64,000 nt of DNA from IMGVR_UViG_3300036770_006296:1-64000, one strand, 5' to 3'. Positions 11,477 through 53,664 are shown, counted from the first letter of the stretch. Program-made: numbers and translations. Notes: generated from the sequence alone by a model not told the origin.

Positions 11477-12149
11477 AATAATAGGTATAGATTTTTCGTT
11501 GAATTCCCCTGGTATTTGTATATTGGAAGAAACATCTTGTAAATGGGTTAGTCTACACAGAACTAAAAACATTATAGATAAGATGCTGAAAAAAGAGGGA
11601 TCGCCTTTTCATGTGTTGAATGATAGTAAATCAATAGATATAAATATAATCGAGAAAAAAGAATTTAAAGGCGAATATCACATAATAGAAAGGGACAAAA
11701 TAGTAAATGCAGTTTATTTTTCTGAAAAACTAATAGATTTAATTGATCCATATTTAAGTGAGAAAACTATAGTTGGTATGGAGGGACTTTCGTTTGGATC
11801 TTCAGGTAATTCTCTTATTGATATTTCTATGACTACTGCTTTGGTTAGATCTGCTATAATAAAAAAGATAGATCCTAATAATTTTTTTGTCCTATCACCT
11901 ACGACAATTAAAAAATATGCTTTAAAGGGAAACTCTAAGAAGGATGAATTATATAATACATTAATAGAGAAAAGAATGGATGACGATAGGCTTAAGCCAT
12001 TTTTGAGTATTTTGAAAGAATATAGGGATTCGTGGGTAAAAGGAACTAATAAAGTGGAAGGACCTTGTTCTGATTTAGTAGATGCAACATGGATATCTTT
12101 ATTCGTTGAGGAAAATTTAGAGAAACTTTTATCTGGTAAGAAGGTATAA
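11463..12149 (+). CDS. RuvC-like Holliday junction resolvase (RNase H fold)
   Basis: Acidic RuvC motifs IIGIDFSLNSPG, MEGLSFGS, SPTTIKKYA.KGN..KDE and DLVDA. Confidence 0.75.
   Translation: MKSDRIIGIDFSLNSPGICILEETSCKWVSLHRTKNIIDKMLKKEGSPFHVLNDSKSIDINIIEKKEFKGEYHIIERDKIVNAVYFSEKLIDLIDPYLSEKTIVGMEGLSFGSSGNSLIDISMTTALVRSAIIKKIDPNNFFVLSPTTIKKYALKGNSKKDELYNTLIEKRMDDDRLKPFLSILKEYRDSWVKGTNKVEGPCSDLVDATWISLFVEENLEKLLSGKKV
12122..12149 (+). promoter_or_regulatory. Putative early/middle promoter GAAAC-N16-GGTATAA upstream of the SSB gene
   Basis: Same bipartite motif and spacing as the copies at 26039, 28886, 37476, 44287 and 53636. Confidence 0.55.
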
Positions 12150-12189
12150 GTATTAAATAATAAGTAATAATTTAAATAATTTAAGTATC

Positions 12190-13155
12190 ATGGAAGAAAA
12201 TTTTGACATTTTTAATCTGGACAATGAGGCATTTGTTAAACAAGAAGTTAAAAAGGACGAGGATGAATCCCTCTATAAGCCTTACCCCGAATTAGGTAAA
12301 GATGGGGTTTACAAATCTTTGGTTAGATTTTTACCAAACATTACAAATCCAAAAAAATCGAAAATTCACCAATACTACGTTTGGTTGAAAGACCCGGTAG
12401 ATGGAACAAATCACAAAGCTATTTGTCCATCAACAGTGGGAAAAAAATCAATTCTTAAAGACCTCTTCTGGAAGCTTAAGAATTCTCCTTCTGCTAAAGA
12501 TCAAGAGATTTCTAAATCTTTCTCTAGAAAAGAAGATTTTTATTCTTTAATTCAGGTAGTTAAAGACGCAAACCGTCCAGACCTTGAAGGTAAGATTATG
12601 ATCTTCAAATTCGGTAGAAAAGTTAACGATCTTATTGAACAGCAAATTAAACCAGAATTTGGTAATCCTTCAAATCCTTATGATTTGTTTGAGGGTAAGA
12701 ACTTTGGTATTCAAGTAAGAAAAGTAGGGGAGTGGAACAACTATGATCTTTGCCAATTCGTTGGAGATAAAATGCCAATCATGATTGACGGAGAAGCAGT
12801 AGAGAAAACAGAGAAGGGAAGAGATATCGTAACTAAATATCTTAAGACAGGTCCTTTGGATCTAGAAAAATATGACTATAGTGATTGGTCTGATGAAGAA
12901 TCTGAAAAGATCATGAGAATTGTTAGAAATACTATTCCTGATGGAAGAATGGTTTCTGAGATTATCGGATCTAGCTCTGATTCTAAAACATCTTCAGCAC
13001 CAACGGTTTCCGCAGATGATTTCTATGAGCAAGCTAATTCAAGATCAACCACATCAACAACTGATGATGATGTTGAGGAAGCACCTGCAAAACCTGCTAA
13101 GTCCTCACCTAAAAAATCAGCACCGTCTCTTGACGATCTTTATAACGATCTATAA
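12190..13155 (+). CDS. Single-stranded DNA-binding protein, T4 gp32-like
   Basis: LVRFLP, IMIFKFGRKV..LI, PYDLFEGKNF.I.VRKVGEWNNYD.CQF, and an acidic tail ending LDDLYNDL. Only one of the T4 zinc-site cysteines is apparent. Confidence 0.85.
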   Translation: MEENFDIFNLDNEAFVKQEVKKDEDESLYKPYPELGKDGVYKSLVRFLPNITNPKKSKIHQYYVWLKDPVDGTNHKAICPSTVGKKSILKDLFWKLKNSPSAKDQEISKSFSRKEDFYSLIQVVKDANRPDLEGKIMIFKFGRKVNDLIEQQIKPEFGNPSNPYDLFEGKNFGIQVRKVGEWNNYDLCQFVGDKMPIMIDGEAVEKTEKGRDIVTKYLKTGPLDLEKYDYSDWSDEESEKIMRIVRNTIPDGRMVSEIIGSSSDSKTSSAPTVSADDFYEQANSRSTTSTTDDDVEEAPAKPAKSSPKKSAPSLDDLYNDL

Positions 13156-13173
13156 TTAAAATAATGGATTGTT

Positions 13174-14247
13174 ATGGAATCAAAGGCTATAAGTGGTCTA
13201 TCAGTAGATAGAGTAAAAGGAATAGTATCTTCCGCTCTACTTAAGTTCTTTGGAAACGATTCTCAGAGATTAAAAATCTATCAAGGGGGCAACAGATTAA
13301 ATTTCTGTTGCCCTTATTGTGGAGACTCTAAGGATGCTAAAAAGAAAAGAGGTAATCTATATCTAGACACTTTAACTTACAAATGTTATAATGGAGGTTG
13401 TGGTATTTTCAAAAATCTCAACCAATTCACAAGAGATTTTGAAATACAATCAATGCTTTCTTCTGATGAAATATCGGAGATAGCAGAAATCTCTAGAAAT
13501 TCCACTATAAGGAAAAAGATAAGAAACTCCCTGGATTATTTCTTTGCTGAAAATTACAAAGATATACTTGTTGATCGCGAGGAGTTTAAAGAAAAACTTG
13601 GCTTGATTGAAACGCAAGGAACATACGGGGAGAAGTGGTTAAAGGAAAGGAATCACATTGCCGATGATAAATTTCTATGGGATCCTTATAGGAGAAATCT
13701 CTATCTTTTAAATTTATCTGGAGACGAGAAAAAGATTTTAGGTCTCCAGATTAGACCTGTCGTAAAAAAGAATGGGGGAAGTAAATACTACACATATAAG
13801 TTAAGTGGCATTTATAAGAATCTATTAAAAATAACAGATCCTGACACAATCTTAAAAGCCGAAGAGGTTGATCCAATATCTAATGTTTTTGGATTTTCTA
13901 CTGTCGATCTAGATTCTATGATAACAACTTTTGAAGGTCCATTGGATGCTTGGCTTTGTCCTAATGCAATAGCTTTATGTTCAATAAACAATCCATTCCC
14001 TTTTGATGTGTCCAATAAAAGATGGATGCTAGATGGTGACGATATTGGAAGACAAAAAGCTAGGGAGTTTTTAGAAAAGGGTGAACAGGTTTTTCTTTGG
14101 GGGAGATTTATAAAAGAATGTGATTTACCAGAAAGAAGCAAATGGGATTTAAATGATGTGGTTAACTATGTCAGATCCACCGGAAAAAAGATAAGGAGAT
14201 TAGATAATTACTTTTCTTCCGATAAATGGGATATTATAGATATATGA
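13174..14247 (+). CDS. DNA primase (T4 gp61/DnaG-like)
   Basis: Zinc finger CCPYCGDS...KCYNGGC and TOPRIM motifs FEGPLDA and LDGDDIG. Confidence 0.85.
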   Translation: MESKAISGLSVDRVKGIVSSALLKFFGNDSQRLKIYQGGNRLNFCCPYCGDSKDAKKKRGNLYLDTLTYKCYNGGCGIFKNLNQFTRDFEIQSMLSSDEISEIAEISRNSTIRKKIRNSLDYFFAENYKDILVDREEFKEKLGLIETQGTYGEKWLKERNHIADDKFLWDPYRRNLYLLNLSGDEKKILGLQIRPVVKKNGGSKYYTYKLSGIYKNLLKITDPDTILKAEEVDPISNVFGFSTVDLDSMITTFEGPLDAWLCPNAIALCSINNPFPFDVSNKRWMLDGDDIGRQKAREFLEKGEQVFLWGRFIKECDLPERSKWDLNDVVNYVRSTGKKIRRLDNYFSSDKWDIIDI

Positions 14248-14435
14248 AAAAGGCTAAGAAGAACAACAACAAGATAAAATTTCCTATTGATATTAAAGGA
14301 GATTTAGAGCTACCTGAATTTGATATTTCTGAAAACTTTTCGATTCCTAAACTAAAAAATAAGATAAGTTCCGAAGTGAAAGAAATATCTAAAACTAAAA
14401 AAAATAATAAATGTCAGAGCAACAGCCTAATGTAG
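14226..14435 (+). CDS. Small basic hypothetical protein
   Basis: K/N-rich 69-aa ORF filling the gap between primase and the UvsY-like gene; the true start may be the second Met. Confidence 0.4.
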   Translation: MGYYRYMKKAKKNNNKIKFPIDIKGDLELPEFDISENFSIPKLKNKISSEVKEISKTKKNNKCQSNSLM

Positions 14436-14878
14436 ATAAAAAAGATTTCGCTAGGGATTTTCAGCTAGAGAGAGAAGAATGGACGGAGAAAATAAGAGTT
14501 CTCTCCGTCAGAATGAAAAATATAAAAGAGCTAGCGGAGGTTCAAGTCGAATTGTATTCAAGCAGACAAATGCTTCTTGAAATGTATTCTAAGCTGGGTC
14601 AAGTGATGGTAAAATTAAACTCTAAATACAGAAGAGATAAAGCTGAAAGACTAAGATATTATTCGGAGTCGGTTCAGGTTAAATACGGGGCAAACGAAAA
14701 GACACCTTTAATAGAGGGAGACCTTTCTGAGCTAAAAGAAAGAATGGATCTTGTCGATGGACAAATCTCTTTTTTCAACGAGACTATGAAAACCGTGGAT
14801 CACATGCTCTACGGGGTGAAGTCAAGAATATCACTGGAAGAATATTTAAGATCTGGTGCTGTTAGAAATAATTACTAA
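14411..14878 (+). CDS. uvsY: UvsY-like recombination mediator
   Basis: All-helical 155 aa. The C-terminus IEGDLSELKERMDLVDGQISFFNETMKTVDHMLYGVKSRISLEEYLRSG parallels the T4 UvsY C-terminus, and the gene is directly upstream of uvsW. Confidence 0.6.
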   Translation: MSEQQPNVDKKDFARDFQLEREEWTEKIRVLSVRMKNIKELAEVQVELYSSRQMLLEMYSKLGQVMVKLNSKYRRDKAERLRYYSESVQVKYGANEKTPLIEGDLSELKERMDLVDGQISFFNETMKTVDHMLYGVKSRISLEEYLRSGAVRNNY

Positions 14879-14880
14879 TA

Positions 14881-16422
14881 ATGTTAAGATTTGTAGTAAG
14901 TGAAGATAATAATTGGTTAAGCTTAGTAGACTATTCAGAAGATTTTGAAAGAAAACAGATAGAAATATCTTTAACTAAGAAAATACACAACCATTTTTTT
15001 CATCCCCTTGTTAAGAAAAAACATTGGGATGGGTCTATATGCTTTGTGGATAAAAAATTACCCGTCTGGAGAGTTCCTATAGGTCTTTGGTCTGAGGTAT
15101 ATCAGATCTGCGAAAAATACAAGATAGAAGTAAACATTGAGGGATTAGAGAGATTAATAGATTCGGGTTTCACTCTAGAATCTTATACTGATTGGTGTAA
15201 CGAGTTCTTTAAAGATGGTGTCGGTGGAGATCCTAATAAAATGCCTAGGGATTACCAAATAGAAACAGCTTGGAAGATAATAAAATTTAAACTTTCAGTT
15301 TCAGAAGTTGCAACAAGCTCAGGTAAAACATTAATTGCTTTTATGGTAATGGCTTACCTAAAAGAGGTAATGAAAGTTAAGAAATTCTTAATGATTGTTC
15401 CTAATACGAATCTTGTTATACAGGGATCTGAAGATTTTGAAGAATATGGACTTGAAAAATTAGAGGACTGTGAAATTCAACAGATACATGGAGCAAATAA
15501 GAAAAAAATATCAGGGGGATTAATGATAGGAACATATCAATCCCTTGTAAAAATGGAACCCGAATTTTTTGATGATGTTGAAGCAGTTTTTGTTGATGAG
15601 TGTCACCAGGCACAAAGCGCATCTATAAAAAAGGTTGTTGCTGTATGTAAGGATTCTAAATGGAGATTTGGTTTATCCGGAACACTAGCAAATAAAAACA
15701 CTGCAGAATATTTGACCATCCAGCAATTCCTCGGTCCTCTTATAATGGAGATATCTCCTAAGTTTTTATTCGATAACAAATATGCTACCCCAGTTTCGAT
15801 TAAGATCGTAAAAATGGACTGGATGGATGACGAGATAAAAGAAAAGCTATCATCCCTTAAAGAGAACAAGACTGAAATGGAAGGTAATGAGATCTTTAAT
15901 CTGGAAAGAAAATTAGTTGTTGGTTCAGATAAAAGACTTAACTATATAATAGATTTTGTTCTCAAAACATCAAAGAACTCATTAATACTTTTCCAATCTG
16001 TTGGAGAAGGCTACGGCAAGAAGATTTATGATGGAATAAGGGAAAGAACTAATGATAGGGAGGTCTACTATATTGATGGGGATACCGATCCTGACAAAAG
16101 AGACATATTTACTAAGAGGATGGAGGAAGGAGTTAACAAAATAATGGTTGCTTCTTTTGGTACTATGTCCACTGGTATATCAGTAAAAAACATTCACAAT
16201 ATATTCTTAACCGAATCATATAAGTCGGAGGTACTTATAAAGCAGAGTTTAGGAAGGGGCATGAGATTGTTCGAGGGTAAGGAGAAAGTTAACATAATAG
16301 ATTTCGTAGATGATTTTGCTTGGGGCGGAAAAGAGAACTATTTGCTAAAGCATTCGAAGGAAAGAATAGAAATTTATAAAAGGGAACATTTCGATTATAA
16401 AATTTATAATGTCAAAATTTAG
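14881..16422 (+). CDS. uvsW: UvsW-like SF2 DNA helicase
   Basis: PRDYQ, ATSSGKT (Walker A), VDECH (motif II), LSGT, STGISVKNIHN and QSLGRGMR. Confidence 0.9.
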   Translation: MLRFVVSEDNNWLSLVDYSEDFERKQIEISLTKKIHNHFFHPLVKKKHWDGSICFVDKKLPVWRVPIGLWSEVYQICEKYKIEVNIEGLERLIDSGFTLESYTDWCNEFFKDGVGGDPNKMPRDYQIETAWKIIKFKLSVSEVATSSGKTLIAFMVMAYLKEVMKVKKFLMIVPNTNLVIQGSEDFEEYGLEKLEDCEIQQIHGANKKKISGGLMIGTYQSLVKMEPEFFDDVEAVFVDECHQAQSASIKKVVAVCKDSKWRFGLSGTLANKNTAEYLTIQQFLGPLIMEISPKFLFDNKYATPVSIKIVKMDWMDDEIKEKLSSLKENKTEMEGNEIFNLERKLVVGSDKRLNYIIDFVLKTSKNSLILFQSVGEGYGKKIYDGIRERTNDREVYYIDGDTDPDKRDIFTKRMEEGVNKIMVASFGTMSTGISVKNIHNIFLTESYKSEVLIKQSLGRGMRLFEGKEKVNIIDFVDDFAWGGKENYLLKHSKERIEIYKREHFDYKIYNVKI

Positions 16423-16429
16423 GAAATAG

Positions 16430-16438
16430 GATATATAG
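16430..16438 (+). promoter_or_regulatory. Putative late promoter GATATATAG
   Basis: Intergenic, upstream of a gene with the packaging-tag-like N-terminus. Confidence 0.55.
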
Positions 16439-16455
16439 AGTAGAAATAAAGCACT

Positions 16456-17064
16456 TTGATGTATAAAATTAAAAACTTCAAGGATTTTTGCCAAATTAAT
16501 GAGTCTAATGAGGATCTTTTCTTCAGAAGACATTTGGGAAGTAATGCCTCTACTTATGAAGATAGAGCTAAGAACCACTATGATTTAGGCAGTAATCCCA
16601 CTGTCCTACAGAAAACTCGAGACTTTTTCCAAAAAATGGAAAATAGAATAAACAGAGCGGCAGAAATAGGAAAGCAACAGGTAAGGCAAAACAGAGCGAC
16701 AAGAACTCACGGAGGTCCAGACACAGGATTTGAGATACTCTTTGGGGCTTTATCAGTTGTGCCCAATGTATTAAAAAGAGTATTTGGTCCTACTAAATAT
16801 GAATTCACTAAAAAATCTCCTAGCGATGAGAAAGTGGATATAGAATTCATGAGGCACACAAATGAAGACTTTGCACAAAATGAACTTCCTGCTATAAAAA
16901 CGGAAGATCAATTAGCAGATCATATAGGTGATCTTTATAATAGAGGTGACGTAGTAATGGGACAAGTTCCTGTATTAGATGATATAGCTAGAAATAGGGT
17001 AAATCTCTATTATCAACATCAGGCAAATCCAGCTCAGCCTATATTCCAAACAAATAATGTATAA
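16456..17064 (+). CDS. Hypothetical protein with CTS-like N-terminus (putative internal head protein)
   Basis: Begins KIKNFKDFCQINES. Confidence 0.5.
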   Translation: MMYKIKNFKDFCQINESNEDLFFRRHLGSNASTYEDRAKNHYDLGSNPTVLQKTRDFFQKMENRINRAAEIGKQQVRQNRATRTHGGPDTGFEILFGALSVVPNVLKRVFGPTKYEFTKKSPSDEKVDIEFMRHTNEDFAQNELPAIKTEDQLADHIGDLYNRGDVVMGQVPVLDDIARNRVNLYYQHQANPAQPIFQTNNV

Positions 17065-17067
17065 AAA

Positions 17068-17913
17068 ATGAAAAAATTCTCTTCAGCAGTAGAAAAAAAG
17101 AAGCAAGAACTAAAAGAAAGCCAAGTAGTTAATGAAAGAAACATGTACCTTGAGTTCTCTAAAAAATATCACAAAAAACATGGGGTTTCAGGACCTTTCG
17201 ATAAAAAATTCCAAGGAGATAAAAAAGCTCAGGAAGAATACATGGAAGGCCTATCTAAAGCTTGGAGTGATTATAAAAAAGAGAAGGGTATAAAACCTAA
17301 ATCTACTGGATCAAAATTTGACTTTGCTAAAAAGAAAATAAATGAGTCTAAAGCTCTTGAAATGGCTAAGAGCATGATAGGTGACGGAGGAGATCCTAAT
17401 TATCATTTCGTAACAATGTGTGACGACTTCTATTTTGAAAAAGGCGGGGAAATGATCAGATACAGTAAAGACATGATGTCCGCTCCACTTAAAGTGAAAA
17501 CCACTCCAGATTTAGGAGCTTACACTTTTGGGCCTTTTGCTAATTTAGATGAGTCTAAAATGTTTGCAGCAAGTATAGAATTAGACGAGATCAATGGTCC
17601 TAGAATGGTAACAATCGAAGACAGAAAAACCGGAGACGTCTATTGTAAATATTTAACTTGTAAGATGCAGCCAGTCTGGAACGAGATAGAGGAAGAAGAA
17701 ATAGAGGACGAGGAAGAACTTGAAGATCCAAATTCTGGGTATACTTACGGAGAGGAGCATGATGGTCACCCGGAGGAAACAGAAGACAGCTACGACGATG
17801 AAGATGAGGATGAAGATGATGAGTACGCTGCTACTATTCCTCAAGGGGATGACGATGAGGTCGAAGATGAAATTGAAGACGACGAAGACGAGGACGAATA
17901 CGACGAGGAATAA
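17068..17913 (+). CDS. Hypothetical protein with basic N-terminus and very acidic C-terminal tail (scaffold/core-like)
   Basis: LKES and INES sites, and a D/E-dominated C-terminal region of about 75 aa. Confidence 0.45.
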   Translation: MKKFSSAVEKKKQELKESQVVNERNMYLEFSKKYHKKHGVSGPFDKKFQGDKKAQEEYMEGLSKAWSDYKKEKGIKPKSTGSKFDFAKKKINESKALEMAKSMIGDGGDPNYHFVTMCDDFYFEKGGEMIRYSKDMMSAPLKVKTTPDLGAYTFGPFANLDESKMFAASIELDEINGPRMVTIEDRKTGDVYCKYLTCKMQPVWNEIEEEEIEDEEELEDPNSGYTYGEEHDGHPEETEDSYDDEDEDEDDEYAATIPQGDDDEVEDEIEDDEDEDEYDEE

Positions 17914-17918
17914 TAAAA

Positions 17919-20365: not shown

Positions 20366-20382
20366 GTTAATTAAAAAGATGA

Positions 20383-21243: not shown

Positions 21244-21256
21244 TTTAATACGTTCT

Positions 21257-22240: not shown

Positions 22241-22243
22241 TCT

Positions 22244-23251: not shown

Positions 23252-23257
23252 AAAGTA

Positions 23258-23266
23258 GATATATAA
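23258..23266 (+). promoter_or_regulatory. Putative late promoter GATATATAA
   Basis: Intergenic, before the AAA+ gene. Confidence 0.6.
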
Positions 23267-23284
23267 AGAAAATAAAAAAATAAA

Positions 23285-25162: not shown

Positions 25163-25164
25163 CT

Positions 25165-26038: not shown

Positions 26039-26067
26039 GAAACATTTTAATAGATTTGCAGTAGAAT
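26039..26067 (+). promoter_or_regulatory. GAAAC-N16-AGTAGAAT promoter, overlapping a Bacteroidota-type TAGATTTG element (26051-26058)
   Basis: Intergenic, upstream of the Hc1-like ORF. Confidence 0.5.
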
Positions 26068-26263: not shown

Positions 26264-26268
26264 TCTTT

Positions 26269-28885: not shown

Positions 28886-28914
28886 GAAACCTCTTCCCTA
28901 TAACACTATAAAAT
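28886..28914 (+). promoter_or_regulatory. GAAAC-N16-TATAAAAT promoter upstream of the polB N-half
   Basis: Same spacing as the other copies; also readable as TTGAAA-N17-TATAAA. Confidence 0.5.
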
Positions 28915-32170: not shown

Positions 32171-32277
32171 TTTTTATTTATTGGTATCCTCAAAGGGATA
32201 AAACCAACGATTTTAAAAAAAAATTAAAACAAGGGAAACTAATTGTCGATTAAAAAATAAAAAAATAAACTTGTAAA

Positions 32278-34652: not shown

Positions 34653-35312
34653 ATGGAAGGAAAAAAGAATACCACTAAAAAAATAACAAACTTTAAAGAT
34701 TTCGTAAAAGATCACGGAGACATTGATGGTAAAGAAAATCTTGAAGAAATACCTTGTATAATTTTAGCTGGTCCTCCTGGGTGTGGCAAAGGAACACAAT
34801 CGAAAATAATATCTAAAGGTATGAGATGGAAACACGTTTCTACTGGCGATATATTAAGAGCTTCTGATGATAAAGAAATTAAAAAGATGATGAAGACTGG
34901 GGAATTACTTCCTGACGAATTAGTAGGAAAAGAACTAATCTCCTATCTTAAAGATTACTCTAAGCATCACGATCCTAAAGGATTTATATTTGATGGATAT
35001 CCAAGAAATCTTGCACAGAGAGATATTTTTGAAGAAATATGTAGAGTAAACAAATTAAAGCTTGTATATGTTTTCTTTTTAAACGGACCTGAGGATTTAT
35101 TAAAGAAGAGAATTATTAACCGAGGTAAATCATCGGGAAGATCAGACGACAAAAGCGAGAAAGCTTTTGAAAAAAGAATGAAAGAATATAATGAGCAGAC
35201 ACTTCCTATGATAGAATCAATGAGAAATGGTGGGAACTTTCTAGAAATATCTGCTACTAAAGATCTCGAGGATGTTTCTTCTTTAATATTTAAGAAATTG
35301 AATGAAATTTAA
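34653..35312 (+). CDS. adk: Adenylate kinase, short (LID-less) type, with an N-terminal extension
   Basis: GPPGCGKGTQ, HVSTGDILR, GFIFDGYPRN and GRSDD. The likely start is the ATG at 34653. Confidence 0.9.
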   Translation: MEGKKNTTKKITNFKDFVKDHGDIDGKENLEEIPCIILAGPPGCGKGTQSKIISKGMRWKHVSTGDILRASDDKEIKKMMKTGELLPDELVGKELISYLKDYSKHHDPKGFIFDGYPRNLAQRDIFEEICRVNKLKLVYVFFLNGPEDLLKKRIINRGKSSGRSDDKSEKAFEKRMKEYNEQTLPMIESMRNGGNFLEISATKDLEDVSSLIFKKLNEI

Positions 35313-35348
35313 TTTATAAACTAGTCTATAACTATTAAAAACAATAAA

Positions 35349-36589: not shown

Positions 36590-36598
36590 GATATATAA
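36590..36598 (+). promoter_or_regulatory. Putative late promoter GATATATAA
   Basis: Intergenic, before a CTS-tagged ORF. Confidence 0.6.
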
Positions 36599-37475: not shown

Positions 37476-37504
37476 GAAACTTTTCTCCCTTATTCATTTA
37501 TAAT
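37476..37504 (+). promoter_or_regulatory. GAAAC-N16-TTTATAAT promoter upstream of the topoisomerase II B subunit
   Basis: Bipartite motif with conserved spacing. Confidence 0.55.
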
Positions 37505-40091: not shown

Positions 40092-41009
40092 ATGAAATAC
40101 AACACTAGAATGGGTTATTGTTGTCTTTGTCTTTCATTAGAAAAAGAAAAAGTCACAACAAACAGAGGAATGGTAAAAAAGACGTTCCTAGAAAAGGGAC
40201 TTCCTTACGTCTCTGAACTTGCTGTAAAGAACACGGAAGATCTTATAAGAATAATAAATTTTAACGCCAAAAGTGGAATTAGAATGTATAGGATGAGTTC
40301 TGATATGTTCCCTTGGATGTCTGAATATGAAATATCTGATCTACCGGACTACGAAATCATAGATCTTAACCTTAAAATAGCTGGAGATATAGCTAGGGCT
40401 ATGGACCAGAGACTAAGCTTCCATCCGTCTCCATATTGTGTAATTGCTTCAGAAAATCCATCTGTTGTTGAAAAATCTATAAAGGAACTCAGACAACACG
40501 CAGAGATAATGGATCTAATGGGATTAGAAAGAAGCCACAAGTATCCAATAAACATACATATAAACACAACTAAGCCTTCCAAGGAAGATGCTGCTAAAAG
40601 ATTTTTAAAATCTTTTGAACTACTTCCTGAGGGGGTAAAGAAGAGATTGGTTGTTGAAAATGACGATAAGAAAAGCCAGTTCACTCCTACTGATTTGTAT
40701 AATATGATATATAAAGAGTCAGGGATTCCTATAACATATGATTTTTTACATCATAAATGTAATCCGGACGAGATATCTGAAGAAGAAGCTTTAGATCTTT
40801 GTATATCAACATGGCCCGAAAATACAATAGCTCTAACTCATTTTTCAGATTCTAGAAAACTTTACGAAGATTCTGGTGCTAAAGAGGTAGCACACTCCGA
40901 TTGGATTTGGAGTAAAATAGAAACTTATGGTCGAGTTTTCGATATAGAATTAGAGGTCAAGATGAAAGATCTTGCCTTACTGAAATATTTAGAGGAATGG
41001 AAGGAATAG
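40092..41009 (+). CDS. uvsE: UV-damage endonuclease (UvsE/UVDE)
   Basis: MGYCC, YRMSSDMFPW, RLSFHPSPY, RLVVENDD, YDFLHH, HFSDS, HSD, IELEVKMKDLAL. Confidence 0.92.
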   Translation: MKYNTRMGYCCLCLSLEKEKVTTNRGMVKKTFLEKGLPYVSELAVKNTEDLIRIINFNAKSGIRMYRMSSDMFPWMSEYEISDLPDYEIIDLNLKIAGDIARAMDQRLSFHPSPYCVIASENPSVVEKSIKELRQHAEIMDLMGLERSHKYPINIHINTTKPSKEDAAKRFLKSFELLPEGVKKRLVVENDDKKSQFTPTDLYNMIYKESGIPITYDFLHHKCNPDEISEEEALDLCISTWPENTIALTHFSDSRKLYEDSGAKEVAHSDWIWSKIETYGRVFDIELEVKMKDLALLKYLEEWKE

Positions 41010-42739: not shown

Positions 42740-44287
42740 ATGGAAAGAAAAGTATTATCATTTAGCCAATTTTTAAATGAACAAGAAACCGGAACAACCG
42801 GAGCCACAGGATCTTCAGATTCGGGAAATCTAGGTAGACCTGAAACGGAAAGAGAAGCAAAATCAAGGATCGCAAAAAATATAGTACAATCTGTTTTTGG
42901 CGATATAGGAGGAAGTGGTGGTGTTGATAGTTATATCGACCAAACTAAAGAGGTAAAAGAATCTTTACCTTACAAAGGATGCGGAGTATCTGATCCATAT
43001 AAATTAGAGAAGACCCCTCTTTCTGTAATGACTATTAAGCTGCTTCTTAATTATTTACAAGAGAAAAAAGTTGGTGACTATACAAGAGTTATAAACGAAC
43101 TAAATGAGAAGAGAGCGGTAATAATTGGTATAAGAAATAGAATAGCAACAAAAAAGGAAAGTGCAAATCAAGATAGATTTTGTGATGCCTTATATTTCAT
43201 ACCTGGCAATGCAAAAGATGGAACTGAAAGTGCTGGCGCTACTGGAGCTACCGGAGCTACTGGAGCATCGTCTGGTTTTATGCAACAAAAGAAAAATGAA
43301 TCTCTATCCCTTTACGACTACATAGAACAAAGAATAACGGAATTAGAAACGGTTTCTGAATCTGGACTTTGGACATTTGAGGATTTTGCTCGGATGAACG
43401 GGGAAAGAGAATTTTTAATTAAAAATAGGGATCTTTTAGAGTCCGGAGAAATATCGGAGAATGATTTCGTAGAGTTATACGAGGATTTCTTAGGGATAGG
43501 CGGATTCTTTAAAGGAGCTTGGGATAAAGGAAAACAAGCGGTTAACTGGGTAGGTAAGAAACTTGGATTGGTCGACGATAAACCTAAAACCGGGAAAGTT
43601 GATATGGATAGTGAGGACGATACTAAATCTTCTTCACAAAAACAATCTGGTGCTGCCGGTGCTACTGGTGCTACTGGTGCTACTGGTCCAACTCCCCCAT
43701 CTGACTTAGGTGATAAAATTGAACCATACCAAATAACAACAGTTGCTAGTTTAGCTTACTATGGTAAAAAGCCTATGAATCCTAAAGGTGTAGGTATTAA
43801 GCTACCTGGGGATACTCTTTATGTATTACAGGAAAGTACATTAGGAGGAAAAACTAAATATAAGATGATGGTGGAGGCCGAAAAAATTAAAGTAGGCAGA
43901 TATCCTATAGGGGTTACTAAATATGAAACCTATAAACCAGCTGAAACATATACCGAAAGTTGTGGAATGCAAATACACAGATCCTCAACTAAAGGCGTAG
44001 GGGTTTGTATAGGACCCTGGTCAGCAGGATGCCAAGTATTTTCTGATTATGCTGAATGGCAAGAATTTATATCTAAAGCTGAAAAGGAATCGATGAATGC
44101 CTCAAAATTCCTATATGGATTGATCCAACTGGATGACATACCAGAGGAAGTATTAAAGTCTGCAATAATTGGTTTACCGTATAGCCCTCAACAAGAACAA
44201 CAACCTGTTGCTCAAAACGTTACAGGCGGAACTCAAGTAAAAGGATCAGGAAAAGACGTAAGAAAGGTCGGTTTTAACGAGGAATAG
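42740..44287 (+). CDS. CTS-tagged protein with an L,D-transpeptidase (YkuD)-like catalytic motif and GAT repeats
   Basis: VLSFSQFLNEQ leader; IIGIRN...RFCDALY; GMQIHRS...PWSAGCQV (His...Cys); two (GAT)n linkers flanking an insertion. Confidence 0.55.
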   Translation: MERKVLSFSQFLNEQETGTTGATGSSDSGNLGRPETEREAKSRIAKNIVQSVFGDIGGSGGVDSYIDQTKEVKESLPYKGCGVSDPYKLEKTPLSVMTIKLLLNYLQEKKVGDYTRVINELNEKRAVIIGIRNRIATKKESANQDRFCDALYFIPGNAKDGTESAGATGATGATGASSGFMQQKKNESLSLYDYIEQRITELETVSESGLWTFEDFARMNGEREFLIKNRDLLESGEISENDFVELYEDFLGIGGFFKGAWDKGKQAVNWVGKKLGLVDDKPKTGKVDMDSEDDTKSSSQKQSGAAGATGATGATGPTPPSDLGDKIEPYQITTVASLAYYGKKPMNPKGVGIKLPGDTLYVLQESTLGGKTKYKMMVEAEKIKVGRYPIGVTKYETYKPAETYTESCGMQIHRSSTKGVGVCIGPWSAGCQVFSDYAEWQEFISKAEKESMNASKFLYGLIQLDDIPEEVLKSAIIGLPYSPQQEQQPVAQNVTGGTQVKGSGKDVRKVGFNEE

Positions 44288-44315
44288 AAACTTTAATCCA
44301 TTATCCCAGTATAAT
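44287..44315 (+). promoter_or_regulatory. GAAAC-N16-AGTATAAT promoter upstream of the topoisomerase II A subunit, clamp and polB C-half
   Basis: Bipartite motif with conserved spacing. Confidence 0.6.
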
Positions 44316-47756: not shown

Positions 47757-49250
47757 ATGTCTAAAAGAATAAAAAATTTCTCAGATTTTGTTAATGAATC
47801 ATACAGTCCTTCAAAATTAGACGAAGGGTTTCTTTCAACTATAAAGGATTATGCAAAAAGATTTTTTGGTTGGACTGGTAAATTTTTAAAGAGTCTAGCA
47901 CAGGGATTAATAGAGCCTATTCCTTATGGTCCTAAGAAAGGACTTCCTACTATTATGCTTTTCTTACCTGAAAATGGGTCTATCTACAAACAGATGACAG
48001 AATTTGAAATGGGTGTTAATCCTATAAAAGAAGCAAGGATACCTTTGGAATATACAGGAGAAGATCAGAGTGTAAGAAACATCTCTGCTGATCAATTAAA
48101 GCAAGATGTAATAAGATTATATAGAAGTAAAGAAAGAGGTGGTAGGGCTAAGCCTATCTTTATTTACGGAGCTCCTGGTATTGGTAAAACAGAAATAGTC
48201 GGACAAGCAGCTGATGAATTGGGTGTTCCGGTAATGAAGCTAGATTTACAATTTATGAATCCGGAGGATTTCTTAGGTATTCCTAGTAGACACGATATAG
48301 AGCCAGTTCAGGTAGAAGGTGGAAAATTGATTAGTTCAGGTAAAGGATTTACAAGATCTAATCCACCAATTTTACTTCCAACTGACAACGGTAATGAAGA
48401 TAGAGGAGGTATAATATTTATGGATGAGATGAACAGAGCTAATAAAGCAGTTCTTAACTCCATTATGCAATTTGTACAAAAAGGAGAAATAGGTCCTTAT
48501 AAATTACCAGATAGATGGGTGATTGTAGCAGCTGGTAACAGACCAGAAGAAGCTGAAGGTGTTGCTGATTTCGACTTTGCATTAGCAGACCGATTCACTA
48601 TTAAAAACTACGTCCCTACAATCGAGGGATATGCTTCTTGGGCTGATAAGAACGAAAAGATCCTTCCAGAGTTAGTTACTTTCTTAACGTTTAACCAAGA
48701 TTACTTCCATAATCTAGATGCCGATAAAAAATCTCTTAACTATCCTACGCCTAGATCTTGGACCGACGGAGCATTAATACTCCACGACGAGATCCAATAT
48801 AAAGGAGTAGATTCTTGGAGAGATATTTCTAGGCAAGATATATTAGACATCTTCTACGATCAAGTTGGTCCCGAAGCAGCTGGTAAATTTGTAGCTTACT
48901 TAGACATTTTAAGAAAAGTTACGGATTCTGATATGGAAGATATGATCAACAATCCTATGTCTGCTAAAATGGTACCAGAGGCACAATCCACAAAGAGCGT
49001 ACTTTATGGACTTATAGAAATGGTGATGAAGAGAGTTAAATCGTATGACACACAGAAATTCTATAACGTTATGGAGTATTTCAATAGATACAACGAGCTG
49101 GAACCGCTAAGCTGGCTATATAAAGATATCTTATCTAAATATCCTCAGTTCAAATTTGGAGGAAGTTCTAACACTCCGGAGGATGAATTAAAACACAAAG
49201 CAGCCTTAATGATTACAAAAGGAGCTAAAGATAAAGGTCTACAAGGATGA
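47757..49250 (+). CDS. MoxR-type AAA+ ATPase, locus 2
   Basis: GAPGIGKT, IIFMDE, AAGNR, ALADRF and PTPRSW; leader IKNFSDFVNES; shares a GPKKG-containing N-domain with the locus 1 ATPase. Confidence 0.85.
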   Translation: MSKRIKNFSDFVNESYSPSKLDEGFLSTIKDYAKRFFGWTGKFLKSLAQGLIEPIPYGPKKGLPTIMLFLPENGSIYKQMTEFEMGVNPIKEARIPLEYTGEDQSVRNISADQLKQDVIRLYRSKERGGRAKPIFIYGAPGIGKTEIVGQAADELGVPVMKLDLQFMNPEDFLGIPSRHDIEPVQVEGGKLISSGKGFTRSNPPILLPTDNGNEDRGGIIFMDEMNRANKAVLNSIMQFVQKGEIGPYKLPDRWVIVAAGNRPEEAEGVADFDFALADRFTIKNYVPTIEGYASWADKNEKILPELVTFLTFNQDYFHNLDADKKSLNYPTPRSWTDGALILHDEIQYKGVDSWRDISRQDILDIFYDQVGPEAAGKFVAYLDILRKVTDSDMEDMINNPMSAKMVPEAQSTKSVLYGLIEMVMKRVKSYDTQKFYNVMEYFNRYNELEPLSWLYKDILSKYPQFKFGGSSNTPEDELKHKAALMITKGAKDKGLQG

Positions 49251-50308
49251 GAAAGCTAAACGAAAACAAATATAAAACCGGAAAAGTAATAACATCTTTC
49301 TCTAATTATGTTAGATTCATAAACGAATCATCCTTATATGATCCGGATGAGGTCAACAAAAAAATAAGAAGGGTTATACTTTGGTTAAATATAAACCAGG
49401 GATTTTATGCTGAGCTTCTTAGCCATGTAAATATATTTGGATCTAGCGATCTTAATCCTAAAACAATGTGTACAAACGGTAGGGATATAATATTCCATCC
49501 TGAATTTGTTATGAGACAATCTGAGCCAGCTTTGAGATTTGTCCTTTGTCATGAAATATTACATTGCATAGGTGATCATATGAATAGGAGAGGAAGCAGA
49601 GATCCTATGGGATGGAACATAGCTTGTGACTATGCAATAAATCCATTACTCAAGGATGAAGCCGGATTCGAATTTCCCGTAGATGAAAACGGTAATAGAG
49701 AAGGATTATATGATTCAAGGTTCGAAGGGATGAGGGCAGAAGACATATATGATGCACTAGAAGAATCAGGAGAACTGAAAAAATTAATAGGAGACTCTAA
49801 AGTACAAAAGACTGTAGAGACTACAGGTAAAGTTGAAGATGAGGATAAAGAATTAGCAGACCCTGACGAAGAAATGGTGATACAAAAAGGGGATGACCCA
49901 GGAGAAGAGGGAGAAGATGGAGAACCAGGAGAAGATGGAGAACCAGGAGAAGATGGAGAGCCAGGAGAAGATGGAGAACCAGGAGATCAGCCAGGAGATC
50001 AGCCAGGAGATCAACCAGGAGATCAACCAGGAGATCAACCAGGAGATCAACCAGGAGACCAGCCAGGAGATCAACCAGGAGATCAACCAGGAGATCAACC
50101 AGGAGATCAACCAGGAGATCAACCAGGAGATCAACCAGGAGATCAACCAGGAGATCAACCAGGAGATCAACCAGGAGATCAACCAGGAGATCAACCGGGT
50201 GGAGATAAAAAGAGTCTTCCAAGAGTTGGCCAGAAGGTAATAACAAAAGACGGAAGGGAAGGAACTATAACTAAGGTTTATCCTAACGGAGATATAGAAA
50301 TTTCTTAA
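49247..50308 (+). CDS. DUF2201-N-like HExxH metallopeptidase (stand-alone N-half) with a repeat linker, locus 2
   Basis: TMCTNG..I.FHPEFV, VLCHEILHC..DH and WNIACDYAINP, then (GEDGEP)4(GDQP)18 and an SH3/KOW-like C-terminus. Confidence 0.8.
   Translation: MRKLNENKYKTGKVITSFSNYVRFINESSLYDPDEVNKKIRRVILWLNINQGFYAELLSHVNIFGSSDLNPKTMCTNGRDIIFHPEFVMRQSEPALRFVLCHEILHCIGDHMNRRGSRDPMGWNIACDYAINPLLKDEAGFEFPVDENGNREGLYDSRFEGMRAEDIYDALEESGELKKLIGDSKVQKTVETTGKVEDEDKELADPDEEMVIQKGDDPGEEGEDGEPGEDGEPGEDGEPGEDGEPGDQPGDQPGDQPGDQPGDQPGDQPGDQPGDQPGDQPGDQPGDQPGDQPGDQPGDQPGDQPGDQPGDQPGDQPGGDKKSLPRVGQKVITKDGREGTITKVYPNGDIEIS
49910..50197 (+). repeat. In-frame tandem repeats: 4 x 18 nt (GEDGEP) then 18 x 12 nt (GDQP)
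   Basis: Units ggagaagatggagaacca (49910-49981) and ggagatcaacca (49982-50197), with only synonymous variation. Confidence 0.95.
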
Positions 50309-50310
50309 TT

Positions 50311-51249
50311 ATGTTTATAAAAAACGGAGATTATTCAGTAGTATCTGACGACAAGAATAAAGAAAATGGAAAACCTGGGGATCAAAGAAAATCTTCTGGA
50401 GGAGAGGCCGAATTTTCAGATACCCCTGAGACAATGACTGACATACCTAAAGTGGGTCAAGAAACTCCTGGTATAAAAACATTCAGAGATTTTGAGGGAC
50501 CACAAGATTCCAAGGAAAAAGCTAAAGAGATAAAACCTAATAAGCCATCTAAAATATTTAAGGGTGATCTTCCAAAAAGAAATTGGCAGGATATAGCTAA
50601 TCAGGCTATGTCTAGAAATAAAGTTAGTGACAAAGCTAAAAGACTAATAAAAGCTTTAAAAACCAGTGAGCCTTTAGTTGATTGGAAGAAAGAGCTTAAA
50701 AAATTCTTTGATAACACTTTTAAATCCGATGAATGGGTTCTTCCTAATAAAAGATTCCTTGCTGGAGGTGACATGATATACGGGAGAAGAAACGTAGGTG
50801 ATGACACTTTAAAAACTATAGTTGCCGCAGTTGATACATCTTCATCTATTTCAAAAGAACAGATAAAGGTATTTATCAACGAAATAATGTATCTCACAAA
50901 AACATTTGATGCTGATAAAACTATAATCATATACTGTAGTGATCATATAGACAATATTGATATAGTTAAAAAGGGAGGATCTCCAGATCTAACAAAGATA
51001 GCTTCAACCGGTGGAAACGCGGAAGGATTTATACCGCCATTTCAGTGGGTAGAAAAAAATAAGATCAAGCCATCCGCATTTATTTATTTAACAGACACAG
51101 GAGGAGAAATGCCAGACCCTAGTAAATATGGTATAAATAAATACAGAAAGAAGGTGCTTTGGTTTATATGTTCTCCTGAAATGTATAATCCACCATCCTT
51201 CGGCAAGATACTTTTTGCCCCTGTGGGATCCATAAAAGTTAAAAGATAG
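50311..51249 (+). CDS. VWA-domain protein (DUF2201 C-half-like), locus 2
   Basis: VDWKKEL, AVDTSSSI, TGGNAEGF and IYLTD. Confidence 0.8.
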   Translation: MFIKNGDYSVVSDDKNKENGKPGDQRKSSGGEAEFSDTPETMTDIPKVGQETPGIKTFRDFEGPQDSKEKAKEIKPNKPSKIFKGDLPKRNWQDIANQAMSRNKVSDKAKRLIKALKTSEPLVDWKKELKKFFDNTFKSDEWVLPNKRFLAGGDMIYGRRNVGDDTLKTIVAAVDTSSSISKEQIKVFINEIMYLTKTFDADKTIIIYCSDHIDNIDIVKKGGSPDLTKIASTGGNAEGFIPPFQWVEKNKIKPSAFIYLTDTGGEMPDPSKYGINKYRKKVLWFICSPEMYNPPSFGKILFAPVGSIKVKR

Positions 51250-52574: not shown

Positions 52575-52625
52575 CATTTTTTTCATAGGGGGTATTTTTA
52601 TATCTTTGTTAAAACATTGTACGCT

Positions 52626-53633
52626 ATGAAAATAATGAATTTTAGTCAATTTATAAACGAGAGCTATTCAGAATTCAATGAATTGCCTAAAGCTGTTAAG
52701 GACTTCTTTATTGATGGTGCTAGAAAAAATATCCTCTCGAAGGTTATAGGACTTAGAAATTTTTCTATATCCCTTGAAGGCGATAGAATTTATTTTACTA
52801 TAAATGGCAGAAAGATATTGTTCCCGTTTGTTAATTATATAGACGGAGAAGTCGTACCAAATACTAATAATCTTAAAAACCTTACATTAGTTGAGAACTT
52901 TTATAGGGATTTAGGATTGAACTATTCAACTGGAAAGTATCACCAAGATATAAAGAAAAGAATAGAAATTGAGGAGGGAACTTATACCCCTATCGAGGGT
53001 GTTGACTATAGGATAATGGATAGCGGAGAAAAATGGAATTTTATACGTAGTGTAGACCTAAATCTAGAAGCAATAATCTATATAATGTTCAATTCTTTAA
53101 GAGAAGTGGTAAAGGAGGATATTCCAGTTCTAAACCCCTTCACTGATATAGATTTAAATAATAATCCTTTAATTAAAATATTAGAAAAGCTTGGAGCTTA
53201 TATAGATACAAGCGAAGCTAGAAGGAAAAAAGGAATACTAAGATTTTCTATTAAAGACCTTAACTATGGTTTGATAATTCAGCCTAATGGTTATATCAGA
53301 AGGGACCTTGGAGATAAAACACCTGTTCTTAGCTCCAAGATGGAGATATCAGGTCCCATGTATACTGAGGATGATTTAAATCTGAAGCTTAGCTATTTAA
53401 TAGGATATCTTATGAAGGATTTACTTGTTTACAAGTTCAATGTTCCAGTAAAAGATGCAAACAAACTATGTAAATCTTATGTTTCTGGCGATCTGGATTC
53501 ATATAGTAATTTACTCTCGCAGATAGCATCAACGAATCCTCAGATCTCTGCCATGATGCCAGACCCTAACGCCGTATTAGATCCAGAGGTTAAAAAGGGT
53601 GCGTCTATGTTAAGCCGCTTCGGTTTGTTCTAA
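52626..53633 (+). CDS. Hypothetical protein with CTS-like N-terminus
   Basis: Begins MKIMNFSQFINES (ATG at 52626) and ends KKGASMLSRFGLF; TATCTTTG lies upstream at 52601-52608. Confidence 0.5.
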   Translation: MKIMNFSQFINESYSEFNELPKAVKDFFIDGARKNILSKVIGLRNFSISLEGDRIYFTINGRKILFPFVNYIDGEVVPNTNNLKNLTLVENFYRDLGLNYSTGKYHQDIKKRIEIEEGTYTPIEGVDYRIMDSGEKWNFIRSVDLNLEAIIYIMFNSLREVVKEDIPVLNPFTDIDLNNNPLIKILEKLGAYIDTSEARRKKGILRFSIKDLNYGLIIQPNGYIRRDLGDKTPVLSSKMEISGPMYTEDDLNLKLSYLIGYLMKDLLVYKFNVPVKDANKLCKSYVSGDLDSYSNLLSQIASTNPQISAMMPDPNAVLDPEVKKGASMLSRFGLF

Positions 53634-53635
53634 TT

Positions 53636-53664
53636 GAAACTTAACCAATCAACATCCGTATAAA
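53636..53664 (+). promoter_or_regulatory. GAAAC-N16-CGTATAAA promoter
   Basis: Intergenic; TGAAAC-N16-CGTA matches the ECF-sigma-type arrangement. Confidence 0.6.

What the first reader, a model, noticed from the sequence alone, without database searches (positions are those of the whole stretch)
12122..53664. ECF-sigma-like bipartite promoter ties together a scattered replication regulon
GAAAC-N16-nnTAnAA occurs with identical spacing at 12122 (SSB), 26039 (Hc1-like), 28886 (polB-N), 37476 (topo B), 44287 (topo A/clamp/polB-C) and 53636. Weaker variants occur at 32235 (nrdA) and 35304 (GT2; GAAAT). The copy at 53635 reads TGAAAC-N16-CGTA, the arrangement known for Bacillus ECF sigma factors such as sigma-W. 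It differs from the Bacteroidota housekeeping TTTG/TAnnTTTG promoter. Physically separated subunits of the same enzymes share it, suggesting a phage-encoded ECF-like middle sigma or hijacking of a host ECF sigma.
Basis: partly seen in the sequence, partly recalled or inferred. Interest (0 to 1): 0.65.

Follow-up and report, generated by a model that had tools for sequence, protein, structure and literature searches.

The report
Phage replication-gene promoter class, not ECF
The repeated GAAAC…TATAA signal is a real promoter class, conserved across relatives, that switches on the DNA-replication genes of a large freshwater Bacteroidota phage, but it looks like an ordinary two-box sigma-70-type promoter served by the phage's own RpoD-like sigma factors, not an ECF-sigma promoter.

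Summary
GAAAC-N18-TAnAA occurs 9 times in the window against 1.5 expected. It peaks only at an 18-nt gap and lies 4-45 nt upstream of start codons.

In three to five diverged relatives, both boxes are kept at the same gap in front of the same genes while the spacer drifts. These genes are SSB, Hc1, polB-N, nrdA, GT2, topo B, topo A and a 119-aa gene.

The consensus is G(A/T)AA(C/T)-N18-TAnAA(T/A). The CGTA at 53652 is not conserved; TATAA is.

The 206.6-kb phage contig encodes three sigma factors of 281-293 aa, all RpoD/RpoS-like with regions 1.2 to 4. No ECF-type sigma, gp55, MotA/AsiA or phage RNA polymerase was detected.

This motif (class C) is one of three conserved promoter classes:
- Class A is host-like (TAnnTTTG) and drives the early genes, including sig1 and sig2.
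- Class C drives the replication and nucleotide-metabolism operons, and a conserved GTAAC variant precedes the sig3 gene.
- Class B (GATATATAA, no -35 box) drives tail-fibre-like and other genes.

Most likely class C is a middle/replication promoter read by host core RNA polymerase carrying a phage-encoded sigma of altered specificity. Which sigma reads it is not resolved, and no transcription-start data were obtainable.

The parts
12122..12150 (+). Class C promoter (GAAAC-N18-TATAAG), 39 nt before the gp32-like SSB gene. Its operon continues with a primase-like gene and a helicase gene.
   Evidence: 16.0 bits. Conserved in G001 and G002 with a changed spacer. Genes.
26039..26067 (+). Class C promoter (GAAAC-N18-TAGAAT) before the Hc1-like histone gene 26084-26263.
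   Evidence: 23.7 bits. Kept in all four genomes with -10 TAGAAT, TACAAT or TATGAT. Pfam Hc1, E = 4e-24.
28886..28914 (+). Class C promoter (GAAAC-N18-TAAAAT), 4 nt before polB-N 28919-30325. Its operon holds a dUTPase-like gene and nrdB.
   Evidence: 18.6 bits. Orthologs keep GAAACCTCT-N-TAAGAT at N18. Genes.
32235..32263 (+). Class C promoter (GAAAC-N18-TAAAAA) before nrdA 32278-34644 and an adenylate-kinase-like gene.
   Evidence: 16.4 bits. G002 and G003 keep GAAAC-N18-TAAAA; G001 has N17-TATAAT. Genes.
35304..35332 (+). Class C variant (GAAAT-N18-TATAAC) before the GT2 glycosyltransferase gene 35349-36581.
   Evidence: GAAATTTAAT-N-TATAAn is kept at N18 in all four genomes. Pfam GT2.
37476..37504 (+). 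Class C promoter (GAAAC-N18-TATAAT), 6 nt before the topoisomerase II B-type subunit gene 37511-39298. This spacing predicts a leaderless mRNA.
   Evidence: 19.3 bits. Conserved in G001. G002 and G003 have a different upstream arrangement. Toprim + HATPase domains.
44287..44315 (+). Class C promoter (GAAAC-N18-TATAAT) before topoisomerase II A-type subunit gene 44339-45754, an unknown 255-aa gene, and polB-C 46516-47685.
   Evidence: 24.3 bits. tAGAAACTTTaTTc plus TAnAAw at N18 is kept in 8 of 10 related contigs while the spacer diverges. Genes.
53636..53664 (+). Class C promoter (GAAAC-N18-TATAAA) before an unknown 119-aa gene 53683-54042, followed by SLT transglycosylase and exonuclease genes.
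   Evidence: 21.7 bits. Kept in all four genomes although the protein is only 42-53% identical. The CGTA is not conserved.
40920..40948 (+). Possible internal class C site (GAAAC-N18-TATAGA) inside the UvdE gene, 48 nt before the small gene 40997-41212. Status uncertain.
   Evidence: 19.6 bits. It is conserved in G001 and G002, but the stretch is coding, so conservation is uninformative.
11929..11957 (+). Pattern match inside a gene; probably chance.
   Evidence: 13.7 bits. Absent from G001 and G002.
9259..9286 (-). Pattern match antisense inside a gene; chance.
36590..36597 (+). Example of the separate class B promoter (GATATATA, no -35 box), interleaved with class C. Other window copies start at 4802, 8583, 16430, 20357, 23258, 39318, 42728, 47729 and 62841 (+) and at 57796-57803 (-).
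   Evidence: 49 copies in the genome, 34 of them intergenic, although only 9% of the genome is intergenic. Exact box kept in 24 of 31 orthologous upstream regions.

Best explanation
The motif is a lineage-specific sigma-70-family-type promoter. It has a -35 box G(A/T)AA(C/T), usually followed by T/A, then 18 nt to a -10 box TAnAA(T/A). This is equivalent to GAAACT-N17-TAnAAt.

It heads the DNA-replication and nucleotide-metabolism operons of a large (over 206 kb), T4-related freshwater phage of Bacteroidota. It also heads the gene of one phage sigma factor (sig3), so it behaves as a middle/replication class.

It lies between two other classes. Host-type early promoters (class A, TAnnTTTG) drive sig1 and sig2. 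A -10-only class (class B, GATATATAA) drives other genes.

Shown: the motif is real, spacing-specific, oriented with genes, and kept at orthologous genes.

Inferred: it is read by host core RNA polymerase carrying one of the phage's own RpoD-like sigma factors whose DNA-reading helices have diverged from the host's (sig3 family or sig2). It is not read by an ECF sigma. Which phage sigma reads it is unresolved.
For: Statistics and spacing.

Conservation:
- The motif is kept at orthologs of 10 genes across G000-G003, L148 and L149, with spacer identity about 45%.
- Each gene keeps its own variant: GAAAT for GT2, GTAAC for the 335-aa gene and for sig3.
- The motif is enriched and strand-biased in relatives G001-G005 and G008 against a reversed-pattern control.
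- It is not enriched in three more distant sigma-bearing phages.

Downstream genes: gp32-like SSB, primase-like, helicase, Hc1, split polB, nrdA/nrdB, dUTPase-like, kinase, and both topo II subunits.

Sigma factors:
- Three phage sigmas have regions 1.2, 2, (3) and 4. Their best matches are RpoD/RpoS.
- sig1 is 53-60% identical over its full length to Bacteroidota primary sigma and shares its 2.4 and 4.2 helices.
- sig2 has R584E/R588E in helix 4.2 (E. coli sigma-70 numbering). The sig3 family has WHIRKNI in 2.4 and EWAR in 4.2, invariant among orthologs.
- sig1 and sig2 have class A promoters. sig3 has the GTAAC-N18 variant in 5 orthologs.

Promoter classes: class B and class C identities are conserved separately.
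Against: There are no transcription-start data. The only RNA-labelled runs hold tiny contigs that cannot show starts.

The sigma-to-promoter assignment is pure inference:
- sig2 has no ortholog in G002 or G003, which do have class C sites.
- All related contigs are fragments (31-85% complete), so phyletic patterns are weak.
- The contig itself is about 81% complete, so a further factor could be missing.

The T at -7 of the -10 box is present in only about half the sites.

Several sites lie only 4 nt from the called ATG. That is short for a canonical start-site distance.
Confidence: 0.55

Rival explanations
1. Sigma appropriation, as at T4 middle promoters. Host sigma-A (or its phage copy sig1) supplies -10 recognition, and an unrecognised phage activator binds the GAAAC box in place of sigma region 4.
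For: The phage is T4-like in its replication genes (gp32-type SSB, polB hits to T4-like phages). The regulon matches T4 middle genes. sig1 and host sigma-A share the TA-reading region 2.4.
Against: No MotA or AsiA homolog was found. The -10 box lacks the TTTG part that Bacteroidota sigma-A needs (PMC9723704). The phage carries two sigmas with altered reading helices that otherwise have no assigned promoter class.
Confidence: 0.15
2. One phage sigma (sig3) reads both class C and class B as two architectures: -35 plus a weak -10, versus an extended -10 alone. On this view class C is not a separately timed regulon.
For: Both classes share a TA-start, A/T-rich -10 and the same distances to start codons (4-7 nt or about 12-26 nt). 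sig3 is the only phage sigma found across the lineage. No gp55-like factor was detected for class B.
Against: Class identity is kept gene by gene across genomes. Gene contents differ: replication genes versus tail-fibre-like, MoxR/VWA, DnaJ and UvdE genes.
Confidence: 0.15
3. One reading: an ECF-type promoter read by a host ECF sigma, or by a phage ECF sigma lying in the missing ~19% of the genome.
For: The -35 box contains the AAC typical of ECF promoters. One copy reads TGAAAC-N16-CGTA. Bacteroidota hosts carry several ECF sigmas (PMC9723704).
Against: The CGTA is not conserved at the orthologous site, and the conserved -10 is TAnAAt. No ECF-type sigma is present in the contig. Depending on a normally sequestered host stress sigma for replication genes is unparsimonious when the phage has three sigmas of its own.
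Confidence: 0.07
4. Not a promoter: a chance A/T-rich pattern, or a binding site for some other oriented DNA-binding protein.
For: There are no transcription-start data. The genome is A/T-rich, so TAnAA is common (the peak is much weaker with TA.AA than with TATAA).
Against: The peak is spacing-specific, the sites follow gene orientation and lie just upstream of starts, and both boxes are kept with a drifting spacer in up to four genomes.
Confidence: 0.05

Closest known systems
Bacillus phage SPO1 sigma cascade (host sigma-A for early genes, gp28 for middle, gp33/34 for late)
   Same: Phage-encoded sigma-70-family factors redirect host core polymerase to phage-specific two-box promoters in temporal classes. 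Here a sigma gene itself sits in a promoter class of the cascade.
   Different: The host phylum is different, with an unusual primary sigma. The phage sigmas here are full-length copies derived from the host-type primary sigma, 53-60% identical for sig1. The consensus is different, and the sigma-to-class assignment is untested.
T4 middle promoters (MotA box at -30 plus sigma-70 -10; MotA/AsiA appropriation) and T4 late promoters (TATAAATA, gp55)
   Same: The replication genes (gene 32 type SSB, polymerase, topoisomerase subunits, nrd) share a special upstream box plus a TA-start -10. A separate -10-only class (GATATATAA) resembles T4 late promoters.
   Different: No MotA, AsiA or gp55 homolog was detected. 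Three RpoD-like sigmas are present instead.
ECF sigma promoters (e.g. B. subtilis sigma-W TGAAAC-N16-CGTA; flavobacterial ECF motif with a CGT -10)
   Same: GAAAC/AAC-containing -35 box and a fixed spacer.
   Different: The conserved -10 is TAnAAt, not CGT. No ECF-type sigma is encoded.
Bacteroidota sigma-A promoters (-33 TTTG, -7 TAnnTTTG at -12 to -5; PMC9723704)
   Same: Same T-12 A-11 start of the downstream box. The phage's class A early promoters are of this type.
   Different: Class C lacks the TTTG part and has a different upstream box.
'Moraphages', large aquatic Bacteroidota phages (PMC12619734)
   Same: Freshwater habitat, an Hc1-like histone (PF07432), DnaJ, a sigma factor among the core genes, T4-like genes, and no phage RNA polymerase.
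   Different: Membership of this phage was not tested by phylogeny. That paper does not analyse promoters.

Membership tests
ECF (group 4) sigma-dependent promoter | -35 box containing AAC | tested here: met
   GAAAC is invariant in the main sites. GAAAT and GTAAC variants also occur.
ECF (group 4) sigma-dependent promoter | -10 box with a conserved CGT (or similar) about 16-17 nt downstream of AAC | tested here: not met
   The conserved box is TAnAA(T/A), 18 nt after GAAAC. CGTA occurs at 53652 and in G003, but G001 and G002 have AATA there.
ECF (group 4) sigma-dependent promoter | A cognate two-domain ECF sigma (regions 2 and 4 only) is available, typically with an anti-sigma partner | tested here: not met
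   Only three sigmas were found, 281-293 aa, with regions 1.2, 2, (3) and 4. PF08281 gives nothing over its cut-off. The host's ECF set is unknown. The contig is about 81% complete.
Sigma-70-family (group 1/2 type) two-box promoter | Two short boxes at a fixed 17±1 spacing, oriented with the gene and just upstream of it | tested here: met
   Sharp peak at N18 after GAAAC, which equals N17 after GAAACT. Sites lie 4-45 nt from start codons.
Sigma-70-family (group 1/2 type) two-box promoter | Transcription starts 5-9 nt downstream of the -10 box | not testable with these tools
   Only assembled contigs of two RNA-labelled runs were available, and they show no starts.
Canonical TTGACA-N17-TATAAT promoter | Enrichment of near-consensus sites | tested here: not met
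   56 sites found against 73 expected in 11001-31000.
Bacteroidota sigma-A promoter | TAnnTTTG at -12 to -5 | tested here: not met
   Class C -10 boxes read TAnAA(T/A) followed by varied bases. Class A sites of the same genome do meet this feature.
T4-type middle promoter (sigma appropriation) | MotA-like activator and AsiA-like co-activator encoded by the phage | tested here: not met
   PF09158 and PF09010 give no match at E <= 10. Distant analogues cannot be excluded.
Phage-encoded sigma cascade (SPO1 type) | The phage encodes sigma-70-family factors, and promoter classes distinct from the host's are conserved | tested here: met
   Three sigmas. Classes B and C are conserved at orthologs. 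The sig3 gene is under the class C variant.
Phage-encoded sigma cascade (SPO1 type) | A given phage sigma directs transcription from the given promoter class | not testable with these tools
   Needs in vitro transcription or genetics.

The most novel reading that the evidence does not exclude
A family of phage sigma factors descended from the unusual Bacteroidota primary sigma has evolved a new promoter code: -35 G(A/T)AAC and -10 TAnAAt. The sig3 type has WHIRKNI in region 2.4 and EWAR in region 4.2. It forms a three-tier cascade (host type, then class C, then class B) in widespread freshwater jumbo phages. That would supply a natural orthogonal sigma/promoter pair for Bacteroidota, and a window on how sigma specificity is rewired.
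Probability: 0.35. Interest if true: 0.6.

Novelty: new member of a known kind. Interest (0 to 1): 0.45.

Why it matters
Transcription programmes of Bacteroidota phages that rely on host polymerase are almost unstudied, and the phylum's primary sigma reads an atypical promoter.

This work gives a full, testable map for one phage group: three conserved promoter classes, three phage sigmas, and a sigma gene placed inside the cascade. The group was found in metagenomes from 15 studies, in groundwater, freshwater, drinking water, river and estuary.

It corrects the ECF label. It also narrows the experiment to a few proteins and templates.

Tried and rejected
- RNA evidence: 24 runs were listed and 20 hold the stretch. 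Only two are RNA-labelled. These are kept as contigs and cover a few hundred bases inside polB-N, nrdB and nrdA, so no starts, strand or levels can be read.
- ECF sigma: the PF08281 search gave nothing over its cut-off.
- T4 gp55: the protein itself and the profiles phrog_234 and phrog_12791 gave no match.
- MotA and AsiA: no match.
- Phage RNA polymerases: PF00562 gave no match with good controls. PF00940 gave no match, but its control also rang nowhere, so that result is uninformative.
- Canonical sigma-70 consensus and intrinsic terminators: neither is enriched.
- 5-mer enrichment upstream of genes showed only A/T richness.
- Linking a sigma to class C or class B by presence and absence across relatives failed. 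The contigs are fragments. Both classes occur wherever sig3 orthologs of 50% identity or more occur, and both are absent from more distant phages.
- A distant phage (L138) has GAAAC-N18-TATAAC in front of its sigma gene, but that sigma has a host-like 4.2 helix, so the lead went nowhere.
- The 'clamp' label for 45747-46514 is unverified: no Pfam, PHROG or PDB-sequence match.
- (script) returned no answer and was repeated.
Full report
CONTEXT. The window is the first 64 kb of a single 206,617-bp virus contig. GC is 0.35 and the completeness estimate is 81%. About three quarters of the genes are on the + strand.

The replication proteins are T4-like:
- a gp32-type SSB;
- a family-B polymerase split into two genes, whose nearest database relatives are huge uncultured phages and Prevotella Lak phages;
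- topoisomerase II in two subunits;
- nrdA and nrdB.

It also has an Hc1-like histone, a DnaJ homolog and sigma factors. These match the features reported for the aquatic Bacteroidota 'moraphages' (PMC12619734). I did not test membership of that group by phylogeny. Near-identical DNA is present in metagenomes from 15 studies, covering groundwater, freshwater, drinking water, river and estuary.

Several independent counts agree.
- GAAAC-N18-TANAA occurs 9 times in the window against 1.46 expected. None of 100 shuffles reached 9.
- In the whole contig there are 13 plus-strand and 4 minus-strand matches, most directly upstream of an ATG on the same strand.
- GAAAC-Nx-TATAA gives 11 hits at x=18 and 0-5 at every other gap from 10 to 25.
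- Over this genome and three fully fetched relatives, 41 of 84 matches at x=18 lie within 70 nt upstream of a same-strand gene. Other gaps give 1-12.
- A weight matrix built from the sites finds 14 sites at 15 bits or more, against 0-2 in shuffled sequence.

CONSERVATION. Ten related IMG/VR contigs were found through the topo A protein, at 79-97% identity.
- Upstream of topo A, eight of them keep tAGAAACTTTaTTc and a TAnAAw box exactly 18 nt after GAAAC, while the spacer sequence changes.
- With the complete contigs of G001, G002 and G003, the same holds for the SSB, Hc1, polB-N, nrdA, GT2, topo B and 119-aa genes. In G000 the latter starts at 53683.
- Outside the window it also holds for a 335-aa gene and for the sig3 sigma gene.
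- Spacer positions are about 45% identical between orthologs and flanks about 51%. The boxes were the anchor of that alignment, so their own identity is not an independent measure.
- Each gene keeps its own variant of the -35 box. GT2 always has GAAAT. The 335-aa gene and sig3 always have GTAAC.
- The pattern is enriched and strand-biased in G001-G005 and G008 against a reversed-pattern control. It is not enriched in three more distant phages that also carry sigma genes. The motif is therefore specific to this phage lineage.

WHAT THE BOXES ARE. The consensus is G(A/T)AA(C/T), usually followed by T/A and never by G, then a -10 box (g/a)TAnAA(T/A).
- Read as GAAACT-N17-TAnAAt, this is the geometry of a sigma-70-family promoter.
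- It is not the canonical TTGACA/TATAAT type, which is not enriched here.
- It is not the Bacteroidota sigma-A type, TAnnTTTG at -12 to -5 (PMC9723704).
- The ECF reading rests on the AAC of the -35 box and on one CGTA. At the orthologous promoters of G001 and G002 that CGTA is AATA, whereas TATAA is kept in all four genomes.

THE SIGMA FACTORS. The contig encodes three sigma-70-family proteins, all outside the window: sig1 at 148717-149577, sig2 at 112075-112920, and sig3 at 172511-173392.
- They are 281-293 aa and have regions 1.2, 2, (3) and 4. Their best family and PDB matches are RpoD, RpoS and SigA.
- No ECF-type region 4 passes its cut-off.
- No gp55, MotA, AsiA or multisubunit phage RNA polymerase was detected. 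The single-subunit polymerase search had a control that rang nowhere, so it says nothing.
- sig1 is 53-60% identical over its whole length to the roughly 285-aa primary sigma of Flavobacteriales, Bacteroidales and Chitinophagaceae. It has the same reading helices: WWIRQAIM in region 2.4 and T(K/R)ERVRQ in region 4.2. I therefore predict host-type specificity for it.
- sig2 keeps region 2.4 but has Glu at both base-reading Arg positions of region 4.2 (SEERVEQ).
- The sig3 family differs in both helices (WHIRKNI and EWAR), and these residues are invariant among orthologs of 53-77% identity.

THREE PROMOTER CLASSES.
- Class A reads ATCATTTTTTT-N8-TAGAAttTTCTAnATT(T/A)G. There are about 47 copies, concentrated at 85-120 kb and absent from the window. 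It carries the host-type TAnnTTTG box and precedes small early-region genes, including sig1 and sig2.
- Class B reads GATATATA(A/G). There are 49 copies, 34 of them intergenic, although only 9% of the genome is intergenic. It has no -35 box, and the ATG lies 4-7 or 15-21 nt downstream. The exact box is kept in 24 of 31 orthologous upstream regions.
- Class C is the finding.

In the window, classes B and C alternate.
- Class C heads the operons with SSB, primase-like, helicase, Hc1, polB-N, dUTPase-like, nrdB, nrdA, kinase, GT2, topo B, topo A and polB-C. It also heads the operon of the 119-aa gene with an SLT transglycosylase and an exonuclease.
- Class B heads tail-fibre-like genes, two MoxR-ATPase/DUF2201-VWA modules, UvdE, DnaJ and unknown genes.
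- Elsewhere, class C precedes unknown genes, and tandem A-then-C arrangements stand before two tRNA clusters.

MECHANISM (inferred). Host sigma-A, perhaps helped by sig1, reads class A and so makes sig1 and sig2. Class C then turns on replication genes and sig3. Class B follows.

The arguments pull in two directions.
- For sig3 as the class C reader: it is the sigma found across the lineage (G000, G003, G008, L149, L178, L180). G002's contig ends just before its locus. Its 4.2 helix is under selection, which fits a class with a strong -35 box. Its own promoter is a class C variant, so it could autoregulate.
- For sig3 as the class B reader, with an early sigma reading class C: the usual cascade logic. 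T4 is a parallel, where gene 55 is an early/middle gene; this rests on my own knowledge. sig3's promoter is a weak variant. sig2 has the changed -35 reading residues, but sig2 has no ortholog in G002 or G003.

I cannot decide between these with sequence alone.

COMPARISON AND NOVELTY. Functionally this is closest to the phage sigma cascades of SPO1 and, in gene content, to T4 middle promoters. It fails the ECF tests for the -10 box and for the sigma type.

I found no description of these promoters. The moraphage paper notes a core sigma gene but does not analyse promoters.

I rate it a new member of a known kind. It is of moderate interest because it gives a concrete, testable sigma/promoter system in a phylum with unusual transcription signals.

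LIMITS. There are no transcription-start data. My gene calls are a simple longest-ORF scheme. All relatives are partial contigs. The distance of only 4 nt from some -10 boxes to the called ATG suggests leaderless or near-leaderless mRNAs, but this is unproven.

Noticed in passing
window 4802, 8583, 16430, 20357, 23258, 36590, 39318, 42728, 47729, 62841 (+) and 57796-57803 (-); 49 copies in the contig: A second conserved promoter-like class, GATATATA(A/G), with no -35 box. The start codon lies either 4-7 nt or 15-21 nt downstream. It resembles T4 late promoters, yet no gp55 homolog was found.
   Followed up: partly
G000 64-128 kb (L045-L048), e.g. L046:1676-1711; none in the window: About 47 early-type promoters share a very long consensus, ATCATTTTTTT-N8-TAGAAttTTCTAnATT(T/A)G. 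It goes far beyond what the host TAnnTTTG box needs. The conserved inner TAGAAT/TTTC part is unexplained and could be a regulator site.
   Followed up: partly
L046:3513-3582; L051:16554-16619 and L051:19914-19958: A class A promoter is immediately followed or overlapped by a GAAAC-N18-TATAAT/TATATA site. Two of these three tandem arrangements stand upstream of tRNA clusters (6 and 5 tRNA genes).
   Followed up: partly
L001:1342-2202, L002:1330-2175, L003:1339-2220 (G000 148717-149577, 112075-112920, 172511-173392): Three phage sigma factors. sig1 is a near-copy (53-60% identity, same length) of the Bacteroidota primary sigma. sig2 is seen only in this phage. The sig3 family is conserved in the lineage.
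   Followed up: yes
L045:2900-3260, minus strand (G000 about 66900-67260): The strongest class C site outside the window (24.4 bits, at 67243) precedes a small Lys/Thr/Ala-rich gene on the minus strand. My ORF caller had overlaid it with a plus-strand ORF. It may be a second small basic DNA-binding protein.
   Followed up: no
window 26503-26545: A strong hairpin followed by a T run (CCCCGAT…ATCGGGG TTTTT) after the Hc1 operon carries a GATATATA in its loop. It is probably a terminator, so this GATATATA copy is likely not a promoter.
   Followed up: no
window 20383-24889 and 47757-51249: Two separate modules of a MoxR-like AAA ATPase with DUF2201 metallopeptidase/VWA proteins. A DnaJ homolog lies at 41349-42386 and a UvdE endonuclease at 40092-41009.
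   Followed up: no
window 28919-30325 and 46516-47685; 49247-50308: The family-B DNA polymerase is split into two genes 16 kb apart. An HNH endonuclease gene lies nearby.
   Followed up: no
window 31844-32276: In one freshwater run (X12) the contigs break at 32044 and resume at 32276, with repeat-like GGA-rich loose ends. The small ORF 31844-32170 and the stretch holding the nrdA promoter seem to vary between strains.
   Followed up: no
whole window: Near-identical DNA (81-99% of sampled words) occurs in metagenomes from 15 studies of groundwater, freshwater, drinking water, river and estuary. This phage is widespread.
   Followed up: no
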